Positions 2,330 through 51,830 of a DNA stretch of 64,000 bases are shown here, in pieces. Origin of the DNA: Vitrella brassicaformis CCMP3155 (Eukaryota; Protista; Chromerida). Position 1 is the stretch's first letter; each line of letters starts with the position of its first letter. Where the stretch lies: the NCBI GenBank assembly GCA_001179505.1, contig CDMY01000887.1, positions 1 through 64,000 of the forward strand. The letters run 5' to 3'. The notes beneath the pieces were generated by a model that was given only the letters and a program-made list of their open reading frames with translations, did not search any database and was not told the origin of the DNA. The translations under genes and the position numbers were made by a program.

Positions 2330-5300
2330 TCACGCGATGTCAGCCCACGGGTCCCCCTCACACGCCTCCACCGCCTGAAACACCGACCGCATCCACCCCT
2401 TCACCGCCTCCATCCGACGCGCCTCATTCCGCTCCGTCACCTTCAGCCGCTCATGGTACCGCCAGAACGTCGCCTTGAGCGTCTCCGTGTCCATGTACTC
2501 GGTAATCTCCATCTCATCCGGCAGCGGCTCCTTCTCGTAGCCCAGCACATCCTCCTCGCTCATCTGGTCGCTCAGCTGGCGGTCGGCATCCGTGGCCGCC
2601 TGCCGCTTCTTGAGGTCACGCACCGCTGCCACCACCCTGCCGACCAGCTCCTCCGTCTGACGGTGCCTCTCTGCCGCGGCAGCGAGCCCGGCAGCCCATG
2701 TGTCGTCGAATTGCGTGCTGTCCTGGGGGATGGGAGGGGGGTTGGGGGGAGGGGGCAGGTTGGCGACGGCTGGGAGGGCGGAGGCGTATGCCTGGAGCGT
2801 CTTGGGTCCCGCCCCGAACTGCTTCATGCACTTGACCAACTCGCCGTAAGGGCCCTCCTCGCTGATGTCCACTTCCATCGCCTGCCCGGCCTCCCCCTCC
2901 CCCTCCCCCTCTCCCTCTCCCTCTCCCTTGACCTTGACCTCGTCCGTGGCTGGGGCCATCGACACATCGGTTGGCGGCTGCTTTTGCCGCTCCGCGGGTG
3001 TGGGGGTAAGCGAAGGGATGACGGGGGGCTGTGAGGGGGCGGCAGCTGCAGCGGCAGCTGCTGGCACCGCAGTGGGTGGTGCAGGTGCCGACATGTCTTC
3101 CTGGGGCTTCTCTGTGCCTGCCGCTTCGACCTTCACCTCGTCCTTCTTCTCCTCTATCTCCATCGCCGTCGTCCCCTCGGCAGCGTGCTCGGCCTTCTCT
3201 TCGGCCACCATGCCCTCCTGTTGCTGCTGCCGCTGCTGCTGCTGCTGGGCCTCCTCTGTCTTGTGCTTGACCGCCAGTGGTGCGGCCTTCTCGGGCACAG
3301 GTGGTGTCTTCTTGGGCTCGGGTGCGGCCGGGGGGGATGCCTCTTCTTTGACGACGGCAGCAGCTGCTGCAGCTGCACTGGCGGCAGCTTGTGTGGGAGA
3401 GGTGGTGGTGACGGTCTTCTTTTTCTTCTTCTTGGGCGGAGGGGCCGCAGGAGGCACCGACTCACCACCACCAGCAGCACCAGCACCAGCACCAGCCGCA
3501 GCACTGCTGCTGCTTGCGGCATCAGCCATCCCCTTGTCCGCACCGGCCTCCTCCTCGTGTGGCCTCTTCTTCTCGCCCTTTCCGCCAGCCTTGGCTGCTG
3601 GGGCTGCTGGGGATGCTAGTGGTGGCGCCTTCTTGGGGAACGATGGGGGCGGCTTGAGCCGCTGGCCGGGCTTCTTGGCTTCGGGCGAGGCCTCCTTGGC
3701 GGCTGGTGGAGAGACCTGCTTTGCTGGCGTCACCACTGCAGGGGCAGAGGCCGAGGAGGGCTGCTGCTTGGGTGCAGTGGGCTGGGCGGGCTGGGCTGTG
3801 GTCTTGGGCTGCGGCGCCTTGAGCTCGGGCACGGCAGCCGGTGCTGAGGCTGCTTTGGCACTCTTCCCAGAGCCCACACTATCACCTGACAGGCGGAACA
3901 CCAAGATGCCATGCAGACACACACAGGTCATTGTGATGCTCACCAGCAACCCACCCCTCTCTCTGCATTCACTTACCACTTTTCTGACGCAGCTGTCTGC
4001 CGGTCTTGGCCTTCGGGACGACAGGTGGGGCCTTGGGATGCTGGCTGGCAGCGCTCGAAGCACTGGCAGCAGCTGCAGCTGCTGGTGCTGCTGCTGGTGC
4101 AGGGGGCGCTTGTGCGGCGCCGGCACTGGACGGGGAGGCATCGAGTGGCGACTGCGACCTCTTCCGCTTGGTCTTGGCCTTGTCCTTGGCTGCACTCTTC
4201 CTCTTGGCCGCATGCTTGGGTGAGGGGGCACCTGCTGCCGTGGGGGACGCGCCGGGCGATGCCTTCGAGAGGCCGCCAGCGGACTTCTGACGCGCTGGCG
4301 CGTAGAAGATGATGTGAATGCACAGACACAGAGGTGACGGATGCCCGAGTTGGTGTTGGTGATGGTTGATTTCCGTGTGCATGAGGTCTCCTCACCTGGT
4401 GGTGCTTTCGCGTCGGAGAAGGTTCTTGGCAGTGGCGGCTTGCCTGCCGCCTTCGACGCGCTTTCGCCACCGATACCCATCCCCTGCACACGGGCAGACA
4501 GCCGTGCATGGCTTGTGCCAAGTGTCGGGAGGCTGGATATGCGCACCTACCTGTGCGGCAGCAGCTTTTGCCTTGGCCTTGGTCTTGGGTCGAGACGCCA
4601 CAATGTCGGCCTCGCCCGCGTGCCCCTGACCCTCGGCGGCCACCCCTCGCTGCACACAACAACGCACAGAGAGTGAGTGATAGTGGATGCACCCGATGCC
4701 TCCCTCTCCCTCTCTCTCTCTTCCTTACCCTCCTGCCCGCAGCGGCACTAATCGCAATCTGTCCCAGCGCTACCCCGAACAGCCCTCTCGCCCGACCCTT
4801 CGAATCATCGGCTTTGCCGTGTCGCCTCTCGGCAGCCTTGGCCGCCGCCTCACCCCTCTGCTCACCCGGCTCACCCTCGTCCCTCTCCTCACCCGGAATA
4901 CGAGCCTGACCTCGACGCAGAGGCGGCTCCAGCGGCATGGGGATGGGGGGAAGACCGCCTCCTGCTGCTGCTGCTGCTGCTGCCGCTGCTGGCGTGGGTA
5001 GTAGTGGTGGTGCAGCAGATGGTTCAGCAGTCGACAGAGGTGGCGTCGCGCCGGTCTTGCCGGCCCTCAGCTTCGACTTCAGCGCCTCCAATCGAAGCTG
5101 GTCGGGTGTGGGCGATTGGCTCCGCTGCACATCGACCGCACCGCTGCTTGGACTCCCACCGCCAGGCTGGGCGGATGATGTCGCTGGCGGCACCGGCAGA
5201 CCCGACGAAGGGAGGGCTCCCGCGCTCTCGGGCTGTGTCATGTGGGGCCTCGGTGACAGCCGCACATGCGCCGATGCCTTCGGCCGCAGGACGGGCGCGG

Positions 5301-5577
5301 GTGAGCCTTGCGGGGAGGCCTGCAGGACGGGTGGCGACCCTCCATGCTGCTGATGCTGGAAGGGGTCGAACTGCGAGATCGCAGGTACCTCCATATCATA
5401 GTAGGACACCGGTGGGCGGCCACCTGGTCCAGGCGGGGGAGGGGGAGGGTGGTCCTGAGGTGTCTGGTGGGAGGGGGCGTTGGGCCCTGGGGTGAGTGTG
5501 GCCGACCCCACCGGATAGAAGGACATCCCTCGGCCTCCGCCGCGGCCACCGCGGCCACGCTGATGCGGATGAGACAT
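2330..5577 (-). CDS. Large Pro/Ala/Lys-rich low-complexity protein with helical C-terminal region, function unknown
   Basis: ATG at 5577 (MSHPHQRGRGG...). Long open frames 3973-5661 and 2330-4546 are linked by introns near 4650-4740, 4300-4360 and 3890-3985. Ends ...EACEGDPWADIA* at 2330. No family recognised. Confidence 0.65.
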
Positions 5578-5907
5578 AGTGAGCAAACAGCTTGTAATCA
5601 AATCAATCACTTCACCAACAGGAGGCCTGAACACACAAGCAGCGGGGCAAACGACACACACGAGGAGATGCGGTCACGACGATGCATGCCGAAAGGATTG
5701 CGTGTCTGCCATCCTTGCCCTTCCTCGTCGTGTCTGTCCCGTGTTCCTCACCTGCGGTCCTCACGAAGCTCTGCTTCAAACAAGTTCGCAACACGTCGTT
5801 TAAGAACGCCCGCCAACAGCTGCTGGCAGTCGTGGGCAGATGGCGTGAACAACGGCCAGACTAGCGGGGAAACACATTACTCCGCTGCCTCTAAGCTCGC
5901 ATAATGC

Positions 5908-5936
5908 AGCCTAGGGTGCTGCCTGTAACCGCTGCT
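5908..5936 (+). promoter_or_regulatory. Candidate promoter motif, copy 1 (AGCCTAGGGTGCTGCCTGTAACCGCTGCT)
   Basis: 27/29 identical to 31166-31194. Both copies lie in short intergenic spacers between divergently transcribed genes. Confidence 0.45.
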
Positions 5937-6061
5937 GGCGGCGCATGCGGGGGAGAACAGGAAAGGATAGGAAGGGCTTGTGCTGCTGATGCTGCCGTGT
6001 GTCGAAGAAAGGCGAAGCGCCTGCCTGACATCGTGTGTCTGATCTGCTCCTCTGCTTATCT

Positions 6062-8353
6062 ATGATGCGTCGGCGAAAGGAGCCCGACGAGGCCTCTCTG
6101 CAGGCAGAATCTGATGAGCCTCCCTCGCCGCAGAACGCCCTTAAGTCGCCGCGAGAGATCTACAAGGAGTGGGCGCGGGAGCAGCCCGACCGGTTCCGGC
6201 TGCCGGCCGACTTCCAGGTGCACGAGAAGCCCCGGCAGATCATCTACGGCTATGCCTTCTGTGCGGTGCTGCTTTATCTGGGTTTCTACGCGCGGCCGCC
6301 GGCGACGCAGACGGGCGTGCTGAGGTATGCGCTGGGCGGCGTGCTGGCCAGTGTCGTCCTCTACTCGTTCCTGCAGGTACGGCTCGGCTCATGAAGGGTG
6401 TAATGTGGTGTGGTGGATGGGCAAGGTGGTGCAAGCGGAGTGGGTGATGGTCCGTATGTGTGTGGGTTCAGACTCGTGACGGGTTGCTTGTGCGGCCGCA
6501 TCCGGCCTTCTGGCGGTGTGTGCACGGCGTCTGCCTCTTCCACTGGTTCTTCGTCATCGCTCTACTGCTGCTGGTGCGAGAGATCGCAGGCCAAAGAGAG
6601 AGGACGGCGTGAATGGCTGGTTGCCTGCCTGTTCATCTGGGCGGGCATTCTTATGTGTGTGTATGAGTGCAGACACCTGACCAGGGGCGCGAGTTGATGT
6701 ATCTCATCTTCCCCGGGACGAGGCCTGACCCATCGCGGCGCAAGAATGTCTTCGATGTGAGTGGCGGACTGAGCCAGAGAGAGAGAGAGAGAGAGAGAAG
6801 CCCGCGAAATGCACTTCTCACTGTCTGTCCATGTGTGTGTGTGTGTGTGTGTAGGGCACGTTGGAGATCGACTGCCGCATCAATCTGTCGACAGTCATCC
6901 GTCAGATCCAGACGCCATGGTTCACCTCCCACATCATCGGCTGGTTCCTCAAGGTCAGCAGTACCTGACCGACCCCACACCTCCCCCCCTCGTGTGTCTG
7001 TGGATGGATGGATGGACGGATGGATGGATGAATGTTGGGTCGCAGATGTTGATGTATCGTGACTGGAAGTTTTGTCTTGTGCTGAGCACCATGTACGAGC
7101 TGTGCGAGCTGTCCTTCCAGTGGCTCATCCCCGAGTTCCAGGAGTGCTGGTGGGACAGCATTCTCATGGACTCCATCGGCGCCAACCTCATCGGCATGAC
7201 CCTCGGCGTCGGCCTCCTCAGGTCAGGCTAGATCCTCACTCGAAGCGCGTGAAGAGTGTAGTGTGTCCATGGTGTGTGTGTGTGTGTGTGTGTGTGTTTA
7301 GGTGGATGAACGCGTGGGAGTTCGATTGGGTCGGCCAGCGGCCGCTTTATCAGCGCGCCCTGCTGCAGTTCACGCCATTCTCCTGGTCAGAGTACCAGTG
7401 GGCTTTCTTCAAGTCGCCAGACCGGCTGCTCGCGGTGAGTCTAGTGAAGTCAAGGCAGGTCAAGTGGCAGAAACACAACACGAGCCGGACAGGCAGACGT
7501 GTGTCGGTTGGCTTGTCAACCAGGCATTATGGCTGCTGGCGATGTCGCTGCTGACGGAGCTGAATGTGTTCTTCTTTATGTACTCGCTGGAGCTGCCGGC
7601 CAGCCACTTCATCCACCCTCTCAGATGCATCTATATCTGCCTTCTCGCACTCGTGAGTCACACAAACAGACACACAGAGGGGGAGAGAGATAGAGGGAGG
7701 GAGGACCAAGCCGCGCGCCATTCATGTCATGTGTGTGTCATGACATGACTGGGTCAGAATGCGGTGCCCGAGCACTATGAGTACATGAACACCCACGGCA
7801 AGCGCATCGGCCACAACGAGTGGCTGCTGGGGGGAATCATCACCGTCGAGTGCCTCGTCAACGTCAAATACGGCGCATCCAAGTCAGTCAAGAGATGGAC
7901 ACACAGACAGACAGACAGACATTGCCTGTCCCTCTGGCGCATCATGTTGATCAGGTGGGCGAGCATCGTGCCTCCTCTCGGCGTGTGTGTGCCCTGGTGC
8001 GTGTCGCTGGTGCTCTTCCTCATCTGGTGCACATGCCACTTCGCCACGTGCGAGAGAGACGTGTTCGAGGGCATCAAGCAGCCGCTGACCCAGACACACA
8101 CACAAAACAGCGCCCAGCAGAATGGAGCATGCCACCAACACTCAGCAGCCGAGAAGGGGTGCTCTTCGCAACAAGTAGGTCAAGAGAGATGGACAGAACG
8201 AGGTGCCTTGATGGTGGATGCCTCTGCTTTGCTGTGTGATGGTTAAAACAGGCGGGCTGGCACTACGGTGTTGCGAGGGCGGTTGCGCGTGTGCCGCCGC
8301 TGCTGGTGTTCTCGCCCCTGGTGTACCTGTTCAAGTACTACGACTACACATGA
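6062..8353 (+). CDS. PSS: Phosphatidylserine synthase, base-exchange type (PSS/PTDSS family), multi-exon
   Basis: Exons encode WFTSHIIGWFLK, LSTMYELCELSFQWLIPEFQECWWDSILMDSIGANLIG (family ECWWD motif), LLQFTPFSWSEYQW and LTELNVFFFMY, with several TM segments. Ends LVYLFKYYDYT*. Confidence 0.9.
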
Positions 8354-17952: not shown

Positions 17953-18482
17953 CGGATCCACACACAGCTGGCGGTCGACGAATGAAGGGAGAGGAAACAG
18001 AACAGCAAGAGAGGAAGGCGTTCCCGCCGTACGCCGTGGCCGGATTTGGCCGTTGATGTTGGCCGGGGCCCCGCCCGGGTCGACACACATGTGCGCCACC
18101 TGTCCTAGCCACCGAATGGCGCTCTCCATCGCCGTTACGACCATCCTTTCTTCACACCAAAGCTTGCAGCTAAGCTCGCAGATCCCGAGAGCGGACCGAG
18201 AGCGACAGCGACACTGACTCAGGACCCCTGGCCTGCTTGATTCGTCAATCATCTGTCCGCCTTTGCAGTGGTACATCTGTGCGTTACTTCGCTCACTGAG
18301 TCAGCGTGAGTGTGCTGTGGAGGTCGCTGACCCTTTCTCCCCATCGATACGCCTCTTTACAGCGAGAAGAGTCAAGCAAACCTCCTCTAAGAAAGCAACA
18401 CACGAGGGTGGCGGTAGTCTGAGGAGAGCGGCGCACATCTCTTCTTTGCACTGCCCTGTCAGCCGTGTTTGAGAGTGGCGCC

Positions 18483-21400
18483 ATGGCAGCGGCGGCGTCA
18501 GTAGCAGCTTCAGCTTCATCATCTGCTGCTGCTGCGCCTCAGGCAGAGGTCAGTCGAAGCACAACAAACACACACTCATCAATGTGTCAGAGCATCACTG
18601 ATTCATACCTTTGTTCATTTGGTCATCCAAATCGTCAGGCAATGCCGTCCTCTTCGCCGTGCCGTTACAAAGAGGGCAGTCGTGTGCTGATGGTGACCAA
18701 CGGGCGGGAGAAGGGCAAGCAGAGGTGGGTCAAGGCCGACGTGTATCGCATCGAGGAGGGCAGTGGACGGACGGCGCTTCACTTGAGGGAGGTGGGCGGA
18801 CACCGGGAGGAGTTCAAAGTGCTGGTGCCGCACAACGAGACCACGGCGCTGACGGACACTAACCAAATGGCAACCGTGGTAGGCAAACACACCTCAACCA
18901 AAAGGGCCGTGGATGGCACTTTGTGATGCTTGGTGCTTTGGTGTGGGGTGTGATGTGTGTGCAGGGGTGGGACGTTAGCAAGAAGGTACAGACGGCCACA
19001 CACGACACACGACCGATGTCAGCCACTCTCATGCGGCCTCTCGTTGTCTTGTGTTTGGCTTCAGGTTCCTGCTGGTTTTGGGGACGACCTTGTGGCGTCG
19101 CTCTTCAGCTTCATGACCCCTCGGGAGCTGTCGGCCATCTTCCCACCCCCTCGCAGCACCGAAGCCGAAACGACCGTCCTCCCCAACAAGAGGCCTCGCA
19201 GACGGAAGCCGACACCCAGCATACCGAAGTGGTAAGTGAGCAGAAGGACGAAGCGGAAGGAATTGAATGCCGAGAGCGATGCACCCATCTATCCCTTCCC
19301 CTGTCGTTGTTTTCTTGTCAGCCGTCTTCCATCCGTTGGCGGCCACGGCGGCACCCACTTCCCTCCCTCCCTCATGGCATCGTCTTCCGCCCTGCCCTCG
19401 ACCACTGGCGGTCCGCTCTTTGCGGGCACCGCCTTCGGCCCCCTCAACAAGGGCGAGACCACAGCTGCGGCCAACGAGGACACCGCCGACGGGGTGCCGC
19501 CGGGTGCGCCAGCGGCTTCGTCTCTGTTTGGCGGCTTATCTCTCTTTGGCCTAGCGACGGGAGGAGGGGGCCTGTGGAGTGCTGCCGCAGCTGCGTCATC
19601 AGGCGGCGGCACCTCGTCGCTGTCCACATTTGGCGCAGCCACACCCACACCCAGGCCAAGCACCGACGTCTTCAACGGCCTAAGTGACGCCCCTTCGCCC
19701 GCCGCGACCACCACCACCACCACCACAGCCCCAGTGGACCGCTTCAGTGGCAGCATCTTCGCGCCTGCCAAAGCGCCATCCACAGCACAGTCGACAGCCA
19801 CACCCTTCAGCAAGCCATTCGAGTTCGGCAAGGCATCCACGGGGGGAGGTGGTGATCTCTTTCATGTTGGGGCGGCAGCGTCGGGAGGTGGCTCTCTCTT
19901 CGGCGAAGTCGGGTCGACGGGCAGCTGCACTGGCAGAGGGAGCCTGTCTGGCCAGGGCGGGGCTGCCACGGGGACGGGCGGCATATTCGGCGGCAGCATC
20001 TCTGGCGGGACTGGTGAGTGACGAGGGGGCACCACATGGCTGGCTGGATGGAAGGATGGATGGATGGATCACCCGCATGCTCCCTGTGGCTGCATGTGTG
20101 TCCATCGATCAGGTGTGGCGGCGTCGTCTTCATTCAGTGGACCGTCATTGTCAGCTCGGGGCAGCATGCTTGGCGGCCCGGCCTTCGGGCAGCAATCATC
20201 CTTCGGTGCCGCACAGAGCGGCCTCTCCCCCATCCACACGGCAGCCCTTCATCAGCAGACACACGTCGCCATCGACTCTTCCACCGAGGACGACCGCCAG
20301 TTCTGGGACAGCATGACCACTGAGGAGGCCTTCCAGCTCGGCAAGCGGCTCGTCAATCTCACGGCCCTCACCCTCGTGCAGCCACACAGCGACCGGTGGT
20401 GGTGTCTGGGCAGCATGATAAGCGTCGTCGAGGGCCATGCGGCCGGGCGTCGCGAGGCGCGCGACAAAGAGGGGCAGCACCATATGGCGGAGGGATCGCT
20501 GGAGACCATCGACTTCACCACCACCAGCACCAGCCCCAGCACCACCAGCAGCCCCAGCCCCAGCATCACCGGCAATGTGAACCAGCACCGTCCCCCGATC
20601 CCCCCTTCATTTGCCCCACCACCGACCCTCCATGCCCGCAAGGCCGTCACAGGAGCCGTCCAACAGCACAGTGTGCTGGTCAACACTCGCTGGAAGATGC
20701 CGGCACTCGAGAGTGTGGATCAGGACGGGTGGGATGCCATCACGTTGGGCCGATCCATCAGCTCGTCTCAGTCGCTGAAACGAGTGGAGGGGTGTCGGCG
20801 GTCATGGGGGCGGTGGGCTGATTTGTTTGAGCACTTCTCCGAGACACCTGACGGCCAGCCAGGGCCGCTCAGGCAGCTGCAGACCGTCGGAGGTATCGCA
20901 TTGTCCTGCAGGCCGACGAGTCGGAGTCAAATAGAGGCGTACCTGGAGGGAGTGAGGCGACTGCAGGTAGGCAACCATCACTCAGGGGAGGCCTCACCTG
21001 CGTGCACACACACACGAATGGTGTCCTTCTCTGTTTGTGTCTTTCTAGGATGTGCTCACGTCGCGTGGCTGCCGCAAGTCGCTCACAAGCCTCGACGTAG
21101 AGATCCCATCATTCGCGGGCCAACACAGCCTCTCTGCCCTGCTGGCTGTCGATGACTTCATCAACACCTGCTGCACCTCGCCGGACGTGCCGCTTAGCGT
21201 GACGACTGGGGGAAACATCTTCAACTTGGCCGTCTTCTACGCCGACGCATTCCCTCCTCGCCCCTCGCCCTTCATCAAGACGGCCATTCAGGAGGCGGCA
21301 CAGCAGACGATGTGCGTGGCCTACACCATCAGCCAGGACGACCTCACCCACCCCCTTGACGACCCCAGCCAGGCCGCCGTCGAGATCGCAAAGACACTGT

Positions 21401-22130
21401 TATTCGACAAGGTGAAGTGGGTGTCGGTCGACAATGCCAATGGCTTCGTCCCCCCTCCCGGCACCACCTCCCCAGCCCCCGCCATCATCAGCCACCTCCA
21501 GCAGCTCCCAACGGGGAGAATACTACACATCAGCAGCGGTCTGGGAGGCGGTGCGGGGCGACTGATGGCAGAGAAGATGCCCAGGGAGGTGGAGAGACGT
21601 GTGGAGAGGGTGCAGCTTGGCTCAGATGTGGGCACAGAGGAGAGGAGCGGCGTGCTGAGAGCGCTGGGGGCGGAGAGGGAGGTGCTCACTGTCGAAGTTG
21701 GTAGACAGGCGATCAGCGTCACTCAGGGCGGCGCCTTTGACGGCTGGGGGTCCAATCGCTTCCCAGCGATTCGCAACATATACATGGAGTTAGCAGGTAT
21801 GCCGGGAGGGCAGTGATTTGCAGGAAAGTGTTCGTCGGTTCATCGTGTGTGTGTGTCTCATCCGCCTTGTCTGTGTGTCTTTCAGTTCCCGATGACCTGG
21901 AAGATGATGTTGCTGTCGAGCTCATTAGCAGCGGCCTGACGTCTCTGCTCGACGGGGGCGTGCGCGGCCTCGAGTGTGTGAAAGTGTGGCTGTCGGGACT
22001 GTCTGGCGACCGTGTCGAAACCATTCGTCAGCTGCTCCCAAGCGGTGTGGCGATCGGCGACTTCTACGTCACCACACAGGATGGATGGTCGGCCTCGCAC
22101 ATTAAAATAAGGGCAACTCGTCGCCCTTAG
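18483..22130 (+). CDS. F-box/LRR-like family A protein carrying an FG-repeat insertion
   Basis: Paralog of 49035-51552 in all exons except ~19137-20240, which encodes a Gly/Ser/Ala-rich segment with 9 FG dipeptides. All junctions I checked are in frame. Ends IRATRRP*. Confidence 0.8.
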
Positions 22131-22619
22131 ATGGAGGGTGAGCCGGACAGGCAGAGCGATCGACGTCTGGCCTTGTCAGGACCCGTGTGTGTGTTGTGTG
22201 GTCAGACTGTCTGTGTGTCACACGAGCCACACAAGGAAGGCCATTGGTGCGGGTACCTCTACAGGCACATGGATGGATGGATGAATGCGTGTATGTGTGT
22301 GTGTGTGTGTGGACTCAGTGTTTATGCTGCGTGTCCATCAATTAATACTCTCTCACTGGCATCCCTCCCCACAGATGAATACACACTGTATTTGAACGTG
22401 GCGCGCACAAGTTCACGTCTGCCCCCACTGCAACTAATGCACGAGTGTGTGCATGCACGAAGCCACCCGCCACAGGCATGCCGGGTCATGCAAGACAGCG
22501 AAAAACGAGTGCAAAACACTCGGCCGTGCGATGTGTCAATGCACTTCACACACACAAGTTTCTGCCTGTCTGCCTCCCCCAGCAGCAGTCACGTGGAGCG
22601 CGCCTTCATCATCGTGGAG

Positions 22620-47776: not shown

Positions 47777-49034
47777 ACACACTCACTCACTCACTCACCC
47801 ATACACACATTGGTGGGCAGGCTAGGCTCTGAGAGGGAGGGAGGATAAGGAGGATGGATCCATGGCATTTTTTACGCCTCCTGACGTAGCTTAGCTTGCT
47901 CGCACTGACTTGCCCTTTGCTGAAGCCACACATACACACACGTGCCTCCACACACACATGGTTGCATTGATGTGATTGAATTAAGGGTGGGGACATCCTT
48001 AGCTGACTGACGGACTGACTGACTGACGGATTGGACTGGTGTACATTTCTCTCCTCTCCTCTCCTCTCCTCGTCTGTCTTTCGGGCTGCGTGCTGCCTTA
48101 GGTAGCCTTTTTCTGCTGCATCATGCAAGCAAACTACTGATGGCGGCGGCCATATGGATGGATGGATGGATGGCAGTTGCGAGAGGGATGTCGCCTTTCT
48201 CTGCCTATCCCATTCTGGCCCCTTCGCCACTCCTGCGTCGATGAGAGGAGGCCTGCAGCCAACGCGCTGACTCTCATTGGTGTCGGTGAGACGAACGCCC
48301 GAGGATGGAGAGGCGAGAAGGGTTGCGTTGCCATGTGGTGGTATGTCATCACAGAGCAAAGCCAACCGTCCACCTGGAGATGGTCTCTTCTTCTGCTTCT
48401 GTTGCGTGAGGACAGACGCATGACACGCGTCGTCCACACGATGCCCCGCTGCTGTTTTGTGAGCGGTAGAGTGGCCGGCCCTCTGCGGACATTCATGCTT
48501 GTCGACGTCCGTGTTTTGCGTGTGCGAATGTGGGATGGATGCTATGCAATGGATCACAATCGCAGTGGGTGGAGTGGCTGCACGCCTGGGTGGATGTGTG
48601 TGGATGGACGGCTGGCATGGTGGCTGTGGTAGAGGCGGCTGACGGACTTTGAATGAAGCGATTACGGTAGCATGAAGCACTCAATGATGAGTATGAGTTC
48701 GATCCAACAAAATAAAGGTCGCACCCAGGCACGCACAACGCACCGACGGAGTCTCCGCCTGCCCGTAGGCTCTATGCTTCATTCCCCCCCACACACAGGC
48801 AAGACACAGGGCAAAGCACCACCAACTGACATGGGGGCACAGGTAGCCAAGAGGTCGTGCAGCAGCAGCAGGGACAAACTCTGAGTGGGCCGCAGAAACG
48901 AATGTCTGGCCTGGCCTGTGTGGCTCATGTGACACACAGACAGCCTGACCACACAACACACACACCCACACCCACACGCACACATGAAGGCCAGACATCG
49001 ATCGCTCCGCCTGACCTGCTGACCCTCAGATTAT

Positions 49035-51552
49035 CTAATAGCGGCGAGTCGCCCTTATCCCGATGCGCCAGGCCGACCATCCATTCACTGTGATGATGTC
49101 GAAGTCGCCGACCGCCACACCGTTGGGGAGGAGCTCACGAATGGCATCGACACGGTCGCCAGGCCCTGCCAGCCACACCACAGCACGCCTCAGGCCGCGC
49201 ACGCCAGCCGTTAACAGAGACGTCAGGCCGCTGCTAATGACAGCGACAGCATCCTCCAAGTCATCGGGAACTGAGTGAAAGACAGACAAGGCGGATGGAC
49301 ACAGACAAGGTGAACCTACGAGCACCTTCCTGCACTCACTGCCCTCCCGGCATACCTTCAAACTCCATCAGTATGACATCAATCGCTGGGAAGCCCTCAG
49401 ACCCCCACCCGTCAAAGGCGCCGCCCTGCGTAAGACTGACCGCACCCTCACCGCATCGACCCACATCGACAGTGCCCACCTCCCTCTCCGCCCCCAGCGC
49501 CTCCAGCGCATCGCTCCTGTCCTCCACGCTCACGTTTCTGCCAAACTCCACGCTCTCCACCTCCCTGGGCATCTTCTCTGCCAGCAACCGACCCGTAGCG
49601 CCGCCGACAGCGCTCCAGATATACAGAGCTCTCGCCCTAGGGAGCTGCTGCAGGTGGTTGATGATGGCGGGGGCGGGTGAGGGGCTGCCGGGAGGGGGGA
49701 CGAAGCCAGGGGCATTGTGAACCGCCACACCTTCCACCTTGTCGAATGAGAGGGTCTTTGCTATCTCGACGGCCGCCTGGCTGGGGTCGTTGAGGGGGTG
49801 GGTGAGGTCATGCTGGCTGATGGTGTAGGTCAACTTGTCCGTCTGCCGTGCCGCCTCCTGGATGGCCGTCTTGATGAAGAGGGAGGGGCGACGGGGGAAT
49901 GCGTCGGCGTAGAAAAGGGACAGGTCGAAGTGGCCCCGAAACCCATTGCCCTCCACGTTAAGCGGAACGTCCGGCGAGGTGCAGCAGGTGTTGATGAAGT
50001 CATCGACAGCCAGCAGGGCAGAGAGGCTGTGGTGGTTTGCGAATGATGGACTCTCCACGTCGAGCCTCGTCAGCGACTTGCGGCAGCCACGCGATGACAG
50101 CACATCCTACAGACAGAGAGAAGGACGTTGCTCGTGTGTGTGGGCACGTGCGGATAAGGCCTCCCCTGTGGGATAAATTGCCTACCTGGAGCCGCGTGAC
50201 TCCTGTCAGGTACTGCTCTAAAGGGTCCCGATAACGCTCACGCTCAATCACTCCGATGCGCTTTAGCTGCCTGAGCGCCCCTGGCCGGCCAGGAGGTGCC
50301 ATGGGTATCCGCTCAAACACAGCCGCCCACTGCCCTGGCAAGAGACGCCCCCCAACCTCTCTCAGCGATAAGGACGAGCTGATGAACTGGCCCAGCGTGA
50401 TGGCATCCCACCCACACAGATCCACATACTCGAGTGCGGGCATCTTCCAGCGGGTGTTGGCCAGCACACTGTGCTGCTGGACGGCTCCTGTGACGGCCTT
50501 GAGGGCATGGAGGGTCGGGGGTGGGGCGAATGAAGGGGGGATCGGGGGACGGTGCTGGTTCACATTGCCGGTGCTGCTGGGGCTGGTGCTGGTGGTGGTG
50601 GTGAAGTGGATGGTCTCCAGACTGCCCTCCGCCATGTGCTGCTGCCCCTCCTTCTCGCGTGCCTCCCGCCGCCCGGCCGCATGGCCCTCCACGACGCTTA
50701 TCATACTGTCCAGACACCACCACCGGCCGCTGTGTGGCTGCACGAGGGTGAGGGCCGTCAGATTGACGAGCCGCTTGCCGAGGTCGAAGGCCTCCTCAGG
50801 CGTCGTGTTGTCCCAGAAATGGCGGTCGTCCTCGGTAGAAGAGTCGATGGCGATGTGTGTCTGCTGGTGAAGGGCTGCCTTGCGGACTTGCGGCCACTGC
50901 TTGCAGAGGGTTGGCACAGCCGACAGCTCGCGAGGGGTCATGAAGCTGAAGAGCGACGCCACAAGGTCGTCGCCAAAACCAGCAGGAGTCTAGAGAGAAG
51001 CGACAAAGGGACACAGAGAGGCGGCATGAGAGTGGCTGACATCGTTCGTGTGTCGTGTGTGGCTGTGTGTACCTTCTTGGTAACATCCCACACCTGCACA
51101 CATACCACACACCAAAGCACCAAGCGTCAAACAGTGGTCCACGGCGCTTTTGGTTGAGGTGTGTTTGCCTACCACTTGTGCCATTTGGTGCGTGTCTGTC
51201 AGCGGCGTGGTCTCGTTGTGCGGCACCAGCACTTTGAACTCCTCCGAGCCGCCCACCTCCCTCAAGTGAAGCGCCGTCCCTCCTCTGCCCTCCTCGATGC
51301 GATACACGTCGGCCTTGACCCACCTCTGCTTGCCCTTCTGCCGCCCGTTGGTCACCATTAGCACACGACTGCCCTCTTTGTAACGGCACGGCGCAGGGGA
51401 TGCCATTGCCTGACGAACCGAACAATCAAACGAAGGAACGAATGAGTCAGTGATGTTCTGACACATTGATGAGTGTGTGTGTGTGTGTGTGTGTGTGATT
51501 TGCCTTGACTGACCTCGCCGTGAGGCAAAGCAGACGATGCTGAAGCTGCCAT
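49035..51552 (-). CDS. F-box/LRR-like family A protein (uninterrupted paralog)
   Basis: N-terminal CRYKEGSRVLMVTNG...WVKADVYRIEEG module, intact F-box-like PAGFGDDLVASLFSFMTPRELSAVPTLCKQW, LRR-like WKMPALEYVDL. Ends IRATRRY*. Confidence 0.8.
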
Positions 51553-51830
51553 GGCGCCACTCAAACCCAACTGATGAGGCAGTGCAGAGGAAAGAGATGC
51601 ACCACTCTCCTCACACCACTACTTGGCACCATCGTGTGTTCCTTCCTTAAGGCGACTTAATCATCTGGAATGTTCACACAAATGGGACAGATCTCAGAGA
51701 GACCGGTTTCACGGAATATGTGCGAGCTTGGGCCTTTCTCGGCTCTCTTTCCGAGAGTGCCAATCTCGTTCACCCCACCGCCCTTTCCCTCCATCTTCTT
51801 CTCTCATTGATTCATCGCCTCCGGAGCGTG

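What the first reader, a model, noticed from the sequence alone, without database searches (positions are those of the whole stretch)
19137..20240. FG-nucleoporin-like segment inserted in frame into the middle of an F-box
The paralog at 49035-51552 reads FSFMTPRELSA-VPTLCKQWPQVRK-AALHQQTH. Here about 1.1 kb replaces the 13-aa middle. It carries a basic NLS-like PNKRPRRRK and a Gly/Ser/Ala-rich tract with 9 FG motifs (AFG, SLFGG, SLFG, STFG, FEFG, SLFG, IFGG, PAFG, SSFG), plus two introns (19232-19321, ~20015-20112) whose phases keep the ORF intact. This looks like genomic capture of part of a nucleoporin gene. The result is a new chimeric protein that probably lost Skp1 binding and may have gained nuclear-pore or phase-separating behaviour.
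Basis: partly seen in the sequence, partly recalled or inferred. Interest (0 to 1): 0.8.

Follow-up and report, generated by a model that had tools for sequence, protein, structure and literature searches.

The report
FG-rich loop in F-box-like gene family
The FG-rich stretch inside this alga gene is real, transcribed and spliced, but at least 15 sister genes of a Vitrella-only F-box-like/leucine-rich-repeat family carry it at the same spot, so it is an old family trait and not a fresh one-gene capture of a nuclear-pore gene.

Summary
Observation confirmed. Gene A carries 1,104 nt (19137-20240) where its inverted sister B (48907-51652, minus strand) has 13 codons. The stretch holds the basic PNKRPRRRK patch, 9 FG motifs and two GT-AG introns (19232-19321, 20014-20112). 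Both introns are spliced out in transcript contigs.

At least 15 paralogues of a Vitrella brassicaformis-specific F-box-like/LRR family have the same cassette at the same site, with both introns alignable. This scan's first stage noted the same feature on another piece of this genome (s1-227090).

The cassette is truly homologous to a stand-alone FG-repeat gene on contig C33, with the same intron position, and to an FG tail on a kinase gene on C605. DNA-level module capture is therefore plausible, but at the root of the subfamily. The donor is not a recognisable nucleoporin.

Gene A is a mosaic: its flanks are closest to FG-less genes and its cassette to FG-bearing ones.

"F-box" is supported only weakly, by motif, sub-threshold Pfam hits and fold matches to SKP2/FBXL. 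AlphaFold places the cassette as a roughly 250-residue disordered loop between helices 2 and 3 of that head. Loss of Skp1 binding is not shown, and the function is untested.

The parts
18483..18548 (+). Gene A, exon 1 (start ATG, Ala/Ser-rich N-terminus)
   Evidence: Read. Homologous to B's first exon. The exon's 3' end is inferred from the GT at 18549.
18639..18878 (+). Gene A, exon 2: small beta-barrel (SH3/Tudor-like) domain of the 'type I' kind otherwise seen mostly in FG-less paralogues
   Evidence: Alignment and tree. Strands 29-78 in the AlphaFold model of paralogue P0001. No Pfam hit.
18965..18985 (+). Gene A, 21-nt micro-exon (GWDVSKK)
   Evidence: AG/GT borders read. The matching micro-exon of B is present in a spliced X7 contig (table 5c).
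19065..19136 (+). F-box-like helices 1 and 2 (VPAGFGDDLVASLFSFMTPRELSA), first part of exon 4
   Evidence: 23 of 24 residues (positions 2-24) identical to B. Equivalent residues form helices in the models. Sub-threshold Pfam F-box match on paralogue P0001.
19137..19231 (+). Start of the cassette: IFPPPRS... with the basic NLS-like patch PNKRPRRRK (19182-19208)
   Evidence: The basic patch K(K/R)xRRxK is present in the paralogues that keep intron 1.
19232..19321 (+). Cassette intron 1 (90 nt, GT-AG)
   Evidence: Spliced out in an X7 contig, record 25, with 0 mismatches. Alignable at 72-78% with the introns of paralogues.
19322..20013 (+). Main FG-rich exon (7 FG motifs; rich in Gly/Ser/Ala/Thr/Pro)
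   Evidence: 13 paralogous copies at E 1e-14 to 1e-69. BLASTP E 1e-10 to the C33 FG protein P0116.
20014..20112 (+). Cassette intron 2 (99 nt, GT-AG, phase 1), at the same position as an intron of the stand-alone FG gene
   Evidence: Spliced out in an X7 contig. Same position in L047. Alignable among paralogues.
20113..20240 (+). End of the cassette (2 FG motifs; ...SGLSPIHT), first part of exon 6
   Evidence: 93% nt identity to paralogue L023. BLASTP E 2e-4 to P0116.
20241..20966 (+). Rest of exon 6: AALHQQTH... third helix and first leucine-rich repeats
   Evidence: 76% identical to B. LRR solenoid in the models. Intron 20967-21048 spliced in X1 and X7.
21049..21796 (+). Exon 7: further leucine-rich repeats
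   Evidence: Joint 21793>21883 in X1 and X7. The exact exon end is +/-3 nt.
48907..51652 (-). Paralogue B (FG-less sister of A, inverted, about 27 kb away). Its 13 codons VPTLCKQWPQVRK lie at 50879-50917.
   Evidence: Sister of A in the 3' tree, 98/99.

Best explanation
Gene A is one member of a subfamily of at least 15 genes within a large, Vitrella brassicaformis-specific family. Family proteins have a small N-terminal beta-barrel, an F-box-like three-helix head and a long leucine-rich-repeat solenoid. The subfamily is defined by a cassette of about 300 residues in two or three exons. The cassette holds a basic NLS-like patch plus a Gly/Ser/Ala/Thr-rich FG-repeat region, and it sits between helix 2 and helix 3 of the head.

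The cassette shares ancestry with part of a stand-alone FG-repeat gene on contig C33, including a phase-1 intron at the same position. It therefore moved as genomic DNA (exon shuffling or segmental capture), once, near the root of the subfamily. It then spread by gene duplication and by exchange between paralogues. Gene A itself is a mosaic. Its 5' exon and its LRR part are closest to FG-less genes (its sister is B, in the same window), while its cassette is closest to those of FG-bearing genes.

Shown: presence, frame, splicing, paralogue distribution, homology to the FG gene, predicted disorder. Inferred: the cassette is a tolerated disordered loop that leaves the head and LRR folded. Inferred with low confidence (about 0.25): it acts as a tether to transport receptors or the FG phase of nuclear pores, taking a putative SCF-type substrate receptor to the nucleus or the pore.
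For: - The cassette has 13 further copies, each just upstream of a family member whose match starts at 'AALHQQTH'. The full exon order (barrel, head, NLS-like patch, FG1, FG2, LRR) is found in 15 genes.
- Both introns align among paralogues at 70-78%.
- Stand-alone FG gene: HMMER E 3.7e-5; composition-adjusted BLASTP E 1e-10 and 2e-4; same intron position, and homology ends at that gene's exon end.
- More distant family members and 11 close ones have the head uninterrupted.
- Mosaicism: A and B are sisters in the 3' tree, 98/99. The 5' exon of A is of the FG-less type. A's cassette nests among FG-bearing genes. The identities are similar: 80-88% for the flanks against 81-93% for the cassette.
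- Transcription and splicing.
- Fold: P0001 model at pLDDT 87, with top matches TIR1/COI1/D3 by Foldseek and FBXL2, FBXL3 and SKP2 by VIA at Z 9.3-9.8, aligned from their F-box onward. FG-bearing P0003 keeps helices 121-128 and 133-139 (pLDDT about 90), has residues 148-399 disordered, then helix 405-412 and an intact LRR.
- The family is found only in Vitrella: 115 clusters, and all 8 looked up are V. brassicaformis CCMP3155.
Against: - The trees are poorly resolved and confounded by recombination. The direction of the A/B difference (A gained the cassette or B lost it) and the number of exchanges are open.
- The direction of transfer between the family and the C33 FG gene is inferred from parsimony only.
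- FG enrichment is modest (9 against 3.7 expected). Phe residues are no better conserved than other residues among paralogues, and some copies have lost FGs or carry stop codons. A specific FG function is therefore not supported by conservation.
- No Pfam F-box or Nucleoporin_FG hit reaches threshold.
- No listed transcript contig bridges the 3' junction.
Confidence: 0.8

Rival explanations
1. One reading: a recent, gene-specific genomic capture of part of a nucleoporin gene created a new chimera at this locus only.
For: A differs from its nearest relative B exactly by this segment. A separate FG-repeat gene with homologous sequence exists.
Against: Fourteen other paralogues have the cassette at the same site with the same introns. 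A's cassette is 81-93% identical to theirs but only about 37-40% identical at the protein level to the stand-alone FG gene. The FG gene is not identifiable as a nucleoporin.
Confidence: 0.03
2. The cassette is only a neutral or linker-type disordered insertion in a fast-evolving, partly decaying gene family. The FG motifs are a by-product of Gly/Phe-rich composition and give no pore- or transport-related function.
For: Phe is no better conserved than other residues. FG enrichment is modest. One copy has replaced much of the cassette with poly-Gln, and several copies carry stops. There is no Nucleoporin_FG hit.
Against: The cassette has stayed open and in frame in most of the 15 copies, at 45-76% protein identity. 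Several F positions (e.g. AFG, SLFGG, IFAP, DLFG, SLFG) and the basic patch are shared across most copies and with the FG gene. The same module is also attached to a third gene type that is transcribed. Protein language-model neighbours are FG-nucleoporin clusters, but at lead level only (0.84-0.87).
Confidence: 0.4
3. Assembly chimera or mis-join at 19136 and/or 20232.
For: Short-read unitigs break near both junctions.
Against: An X1 contig spans the 5' junction without mismatch, and spliced X7 contigs match the cassette exactly. The same architecture is seen on 14 other contigs and in annotated proteins such as P0003. The unitig breaks are expected, because the flanks share 31-mers with paralogues.
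Confidence: 0.01
4. The FG-bearing state is ancestral for the A/B pair, and B reverted to the uninterrupted head by gene conversion from an FG-less paralogue, rather than A gaining the cassette.
For: Two other genes with the same 5'-exon type also carry the cassette (L006, L026). B's 13-residue segment is nearly identical to that of other FG-less genes.
Against: Eight genes with that 5'-exon type are FG-less, so gain by A is equally parsimonious. The trees cannot decide.
Confidence: 0.45

Closest known systems
F-box/LRR substrate receptors of SCF ubiquitin ligases (SKP2, FBXL2/3/5, plant TIR1/COI1/D3)
   Same: A three-helix head directly followed by a long LRR solenoid. These proteins are the best fold matches, aligned from their F-box onward. 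The motif L-x-D-D-x-L-x-x-V-F-S-F-M-x-x-x-E-L...C-K-x-W in FG-less members resembles the F-box consensus.
   Different: No Pfam F-box hit reaches threshold (best E 0.033 for F-box-like over 35 head slices; 0.11 and 0.16 on P0001). There is no Leu-Pro start, and most family members lack the Trp. Z scores of 8-10 are tied with generic LRR proteins. Skp1 binding is untested. No described F-box protein known to me has a ~250-residue FG-rich loop between helices 2 and 3 (my own knowledge; the paper searches found none).
FG-repeat domains of nucleoporins (Pfam PF13634 Nucleoporin_FG; Nup98/Nup42/Nsp1 types)
   Same: Disordered and low in charge (7% DEKR in the FG exons), with SLFG/IFGG/AFG motifs spaced through Gly/Ser/Thr/Ala-rich sequence. 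Language-model neighbours are FG-nucleoporin clusters (lead only).
   Different: No PF13634 hit on the cassette or on its stand-alone homologue, although the model finds other loci in this genome (C748, C367, C730). There is no pore-anchoring domain and no relative outside Vitrella.
Non-nucleoporin FG-repeat proteins, e.g. C. elegans GLH-1/Vasa, whose glycine-rich FG repeats tether P granules to the nuclear periphery
   Same: A glycine-rich FG-repeat module grafted onto a protein with a different core function. [quoted passage not shown] 5 legend). This is the working model proposed here.
   Different: The core is a different protein class (a DEAD-box helicase), and the repeats are terminal rather than an internal loop. 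There is no sequence relationship, and no localisation data exist for the Vitrella proteins.

Membership tests
F-box domain (Pfam PF00646 / PF12937) | Profile match above the curated cut-off | tested here: not met
   No hit at E<=1 on the exons of A or B, or at E<=0.1 on 10 full-length family proteins. On the slice P0001:100-230, F-box-like scores E 0.11 and F-box E 0.16, covering profile positions 5-31 only. Only 2 of 35 members hit. A family profile against PDB sequences finds no F-box protein.
F-box domain (Pfam PF00646 / PF12937) | Three-helix unit of about 40 residues packed on the N-terminal end of the substrate-binding domain, superposable on solved F-boxes | tested here: inconclusive
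   The P0001 model has helices 117-124, 129-134 (+136-139) and 142-150 before the first LRR strand. VIA alignments to SKP2 (from residue 95), FBXL3 (from 39), FBXL5 (from 206) and COI1 (from 20) start at their F-boxes, at Z 8.3-9.8, but generic LRR proteins score alike.
F-box domain (Pfam PF00646 / PF12937) | Binding to Skp1 | not testable with these tools
   No complex prediction or experiment was available. An earlier scan note of a Skp1 fusion to a family member (s1-235847) was not checked here.
Leucine-rich-repeat solenoid (FBXL / RNI-like) | Repeated beta-strand/helix units forming a curved solenoid | tested here: met
   Alternating strands and helices run from residue 154 to 706 in P0001, at pLDDT mostly above 90. 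There are 58 Foldseek matches at E<=0.001; those listed are F-box/LRR and other LRR proteins such as NLRs, TLRs, CARMIL and ribonuclease inhibitor. No Pfam LRR hit.
FG-nucleoporin repeat region (Pfam PF13634) | Profile match above cut-off | tested here: not met
   No hit on the FG exon of A or on the C33 FG gene. A genome-wide scan finds C748, C367 and C730 only.
FG-nucleoporin repeat region (Pfam PF13634) | Disordered, low-charge region with FG motifs in excess of chance | tested here: met
   9 FG motifs in 300 residues against 3.7 expected, P about 0.004; 7% charged residues in the FG exons. pLDDT of about 33 over the equivalent 250 residues of P0003.
FG-nucleoporin (as a protein class) | Pore-anchoring domain, or orthology to a known nucleoporin | tested here: not met
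   The cassette sits in an LRR protein. Its stand-alone homologue has only a charged coiled-coil-like stretch and a basic tail. The only relatives are two Vitrella proteins.
Classical monopartite NLS | Exposed K-(K/R)-x-(K/R) basic cluster that binds importin-alpha | tested here: inconclusive
   KRPRRRK at 19188-19208. Similar patches (KKSRRHK, KQPRRQK, KKSRRQK, EKSRREK) occur in the paralogues that keep intron 1. Five copies lack the patch. Binding is untested.

The most novel reading that the evidence does not exclude
Vitrella has turned an FG-repeat module into a portable targeting cassette and grafted it into the head of at least 15 putative SCF-type substrate receptors, and onto a Rab-kinase. 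This would create a lineage-specific set of ubiquitin-ligase adaptors that partition into the FG phase of nuclear pores, or ride transport receptors into the nucleus, while still binding Skp1 through a split F-box.
Probability: 0.1. Interest if true: 0.7.

Novelty: new variant of a known kind. Interest (0 to 1): 0.35.

Why it matters
If the cassette really targets these receptors to nuclear pores or the nucleus, it would be a natural example of a disordered FG module reused as a portable address tag outside nucleoporins. It would also show that an F-box-like head can tolerate a ~250-residue loop between its helices. At present the result is mainly a clean case of exon and intron shuffling, followed by exchange between paralogues, in a very large species-specific gene family of a free-living relative of apicomplexan parasites. 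For the scan, it corrects a high-scored 'unique chimera' to a family trait.

Tried and rejected
- Pfam on every exon of A and B and on 10 full-length family proteins: nothing relevant.
- Family profile against PDB sequences: no F-box or LRR hit.
- A skipping model, in which the whole 1.1 kb is one intron from the GT in 'ctGTcggcc' to the AG at 20243-20244: out of frame by hand, and contradicted by the spliced contigs.
- Word search with FG2+LRR (window 20115-20966) for a transcript peptide spanning the 3' junction of A: only other paralogues were found.
- Test for special conservation of Phe in the cassette: not above other residues.
- Naming the C33 FG gene: no Pfam hit and no cross-species hit. 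Language-model neighbours are only leads.
- Paper searches for Vitrella nucleoporins, or for Vitrella F-box/LRR families: nothing relevant.
Exons were searched separately by reference, and stored paralogue proteins (P0001, P0003) were folded instead. Exon alignments were concatenated only inside the tree scripts.
Full report
**What is in the sequence**

The window is GC-rich eukaryotic DNA with short GT-AG introns. The assembly (72.70 Mb, 1,064 contigs) is Vitrella brassicaformis CCMP3155, as shown by the accessions of the family proteins.

Gene A (plus strand) has these exons: about 18483-18548, 18639-18878, a 21-nt micro-exon 18965-18985, 19065-19231, 19322-20013, 20113-20966, and 21049 onward.

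Its paralogue B lies inverted at 48907-51652. blastn aligns A 18560-19135 with B 51489-50919 (88%) and A 20233-22243 with B 50886-48907 (80%). Between these blocks A has 1,097 nt where B has 32 nt.

- In protein terms, B reads RELSA-VPTLCKQWPQVRK-AALHQQTH.
- A reads RELSA-[305 codons, 19137-20240 minus two introns]-AALHQQTH.
- The basic patch PNKRPRRRK is at 19182-19208.
They exceed the shuffled expectation (9 against 3.7, P about 0.004).
- The introns 19232-19321 (90 nt) and 20014-20112 (99 nt) are GT-AG and keep the frame.

**Transcription**

Public runs were laid on 18300-22300.

- Run X7 has no library type on record, but its contigs are spliced. They skip exactly 90 nt (19230>19321, GT..AG) and 99 nt (20012>20112, GT..AG), as well as three downstream introns.
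- Run X1 shares the downstream joints. It also has a 119-nt contig (19094-19212) without mismatch across the 5' junction.
- Runs X3 and X4 hold unspliced contigs, so they are taken as DNA.
- No listed contig bridges the 3' junction at 20232/3. That junction lies inside one open frame here and in 14 paralogues.
- A spliced contig carrying B's micro-exon shows that B is transcribed too.

The observation therefore stands and an assembly artefact is very unlikely.

**It is a family trait**

- A six-frame search of the whole genome with B's head+LRR exon gives 146 exon-level matches.
- The same search with A's FG exon gives 13 further strong copies (E 1e-14 to 1e-69). Each lies just upstream of a family member whose match begins at AALHQQTH.
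- A tblastn map of all exon pieces shows the same order in 15 genes: barrel exon, head helices, basic patch, FG1, FG2, LRR. Eleven close relatives have the head uninterrupted.
- Both cassette introns align among paralogues at 70-78%.
- An annotated 958-residue protein of one such paralogue (P0003, CEL91926.1) contains the cassette.

A first-stage note of this scan describes the same feature on another piece of the genome (s1-227090).

**Where the cassette came from**

Outside the family, the FG exon matches a gene on contig C33 (about 154.9-158 kb, minus strand; HMMER E 3.7e-5) and a weaker copy on C605.

- The C33 gene encodes a charged coiled-coil-like stretch, a Pro-rich region, a long FG region and a basic tail ...ERKKLRVKRPQKG (protein P0116).
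- With composition adjustment, BLASTP gives E 1e-10 for the first 136 residues of A's FG exon and E 2e-4 for FG2.
- The alignment is collinear. For example, LMASSSALPSTTGGPLFAGTAFG pairs with MTSDSALPSTSGGALFAGATFG, and RPSTDVFNGLSD pairs with KPRVSVFNRLSE.
- The intron between FG1 and FG2 is at the same position and phase in both genes. Homology ends where the C33 exon ends.
- A retained intron means transfer as genomic DNA, not as a retrocopy.
- More distant family members have an uninterrupted head, and all family cassettes are far closer to each other than to the C33 gene. The simplest history is therefore one capture near the root of the subfamily.
- Short-form genes read RELSAIFPHR-SPIRNGAVHQHTH (L019, L024, L030), and FG-bearing genes read RELSAIFPPPRS-[cassette]-SPIHTAALHQQTH. 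This suggests a clean insertion into that variant of the helix 2-helix 3 loop.
- The direction of transfer (family from FG gene, or the reverse) is inferred, not shown.
- The C605 copy is a transcribed gene (MMETSP peptide P0117). There a kinase-type C-terminal end is followed by a permuted version of the module and the same basic tail. The module has therefore been reused at least three times.

**Is the donor a nucleoporin?**

This is not shown.

- Pfam Nucleoporin_FG finds other loci in this genome (C748, C367, C730) but neither the cassette nor the C33 gene.
- The only sequence relatives of the C33 protein are Vitrella proteins.
- Language-model neighbours are FG-nucleoporin clusters at 0.84-0.87, which the tool itself rates as a lead only.
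- 'FG-nucleoporin-like' is thus a fair description of composition and predicted disorder. It is not a family assignment.

**Gene A is a mosaic**

- In a tree of the LRR exons, A and B are sisters (98/99). The presence or absence of FG needs at least three changes on starred branches.
- The barrel exon comes in distinct types. A, L006 and L026 carry the cassette but have the type otherwise found in FG-less genes.
- A's cassette nests among cassettes of genes with the other barrel type.
- Nucleotide identities are similar: A-B flanks 80-88%, A's cassette 81-93% to L023, L026 and L015.

Exchange between paralogues (gene conversion or unequal recombination) therefore moved either the cassette into A's lineage or the short head into B's. 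The data do not decide which.

**Is it an F-box, and what does the cassette do to it?**

- No Pfam domain reaches threshold on any family protein.
- A family profile finds no F-box protein among PDB sequences.
- On a head slice of paralogue P0001, F-box-like and F-box score E 0.11 and 0.16 over profile positions 5-31.
- The AlphaFold model of P0001 (pLDDT 87, pTM 0.80) shows a beta-barrel (29-78), helices 117-124, 129-134, 136-139 and 142-150, then an LRR solenoid to the C-terminus.
- Foldseek ranks TIR1, COI1 and D3 first (E down to 7e-11).
- VIA ranks FBXL2, FBXL3 and SKP2 first (Z 9.3-9.8), with alignments that start at their F-boxes. Generic LRR proteins score about the same.
- I therefore call the head 'F-box-like': probable, not proven.
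- The model of FG-bearing P0003 keeps helices 121-128 and 133-139 at pLDDT about 90. Residues 148-399 are at pLDDT about 33. A helix forms at 405-412 from the cassette's end (SLIHTAAL), followed by an intact LRR.
- The cassette thus behaves as a long disordered loop between helices 2 and 3. It replaces the short CK-x-W turn rather than destroying the head. Loss of Skp1 binding is possible but not indicated.

**Function**

Nothing here tests function.

- The most likely role, by analogy with non-nucleoporin FG proteins such as C. elegans GLH-1 (bioRxiv 10.1101/663641), is a tether to transport receptors or the pore's FG phase, helped by the basic patch.
- I give this about 0.25.
- Against it: Phe is no better conserved than other residues. 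Some copies have lost FGs or carry stops. Five copies lack the basic patch.

**Comparison and verdict**

The architecture is a new variant within a known kind: an F-box-like/LRR receptor carrying an internal FG-rich loop. The mechanism of origin (module capture plus exchange among paralogues) is ordinary.

The family appears limited to Vitrella (115 clusters at E<=0.001 among 1.84 billion representatives; all eight looked up are V. brassicaformis). Other agents of this scan have described it from other windows.

The interest is moderate to low: the striking 'unique chimera' claim falls, while a modest family-level curiosity remains.

Exons were searched by reference, and stored paralogue proteins were used for folding.

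Noticed in passing
L048 (G000:C605:36000-43921), about 4250-5300 minus strand; protein P0117: A third context for the FG module. An MMETSP transcript peptide starts with a kinase-type C-terminal end (DPNKRPTAKQVL), followed by a permuted copy of the FG module and the same basic tail KKVRVKRPQKG. A Rab-like ORF lies upstream at 6702-7427. This probably matches the scan note s1-239579.
   Followed up: partly
L047 (G000:C33:150500-160499), 4500-7550 minus strand; protein P0116: Stand-alone FG-repeat gene with a KR/E-rich coiled-coil-like stretch, a Pro-rich region, SLFG/GLFG repeats and a basic C-terminal tail. It has no Pfam hit and no relatives outside Vitrella. It lies on the same contig as four family members (C33: 39.7, 57, 67 and 76 kb).
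   Followed up: partly
window 18872-19067 (run X7, table 5c): A spliced contig carries 29 letters between the two sides. These letters contain B's 21-nt micro-exon sequence (GTGTGGGATGTTACCAAGAAG). B is therefore transcribed, and the micro-exon is real.
   Followed up: partly
window 20177: All contigs that cover this base in runs X3 and X7 read T where the assembly has C, and so does part of X4's depth (30 of 103.6). Either the strain differs from the assembly or there is an assembly error inside FG2.
   Followed up: no
window 22136-22205: A 68-nt GT..AG joint in X1 and X7 lies downstream of the stop codon that I read at 22128-22130. Either it is a 3'-UTR intron or the last exon differs from my model.
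   Followed up: no
proteins P0062, P0031, P0044, P0010: Annotated proteins that match the family's head+LRR profile also carry other domains: Rad51 (E 2e-78), TLDc, and START (UniRef's name for the protein). These are either real fusions or merged gene models.
   Followed up: no
G000:C613:211378-212079, C396:7973-8470, C33:39694-40371: Some FG-bearing paralogues have in-frame stop codons in the cassette or the LRR exon, so part of the subfamily may be decaying.
   Followed up: no
G000:C748:174594-177159, C367:70659-70835, C730:1141-1386: These are the loci that do match Pfam Nucleoporin_FG. They are candidates for the genome's bona fide FG-nucleoporins, and they are unrelated to the cassette.
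   Followed up: no
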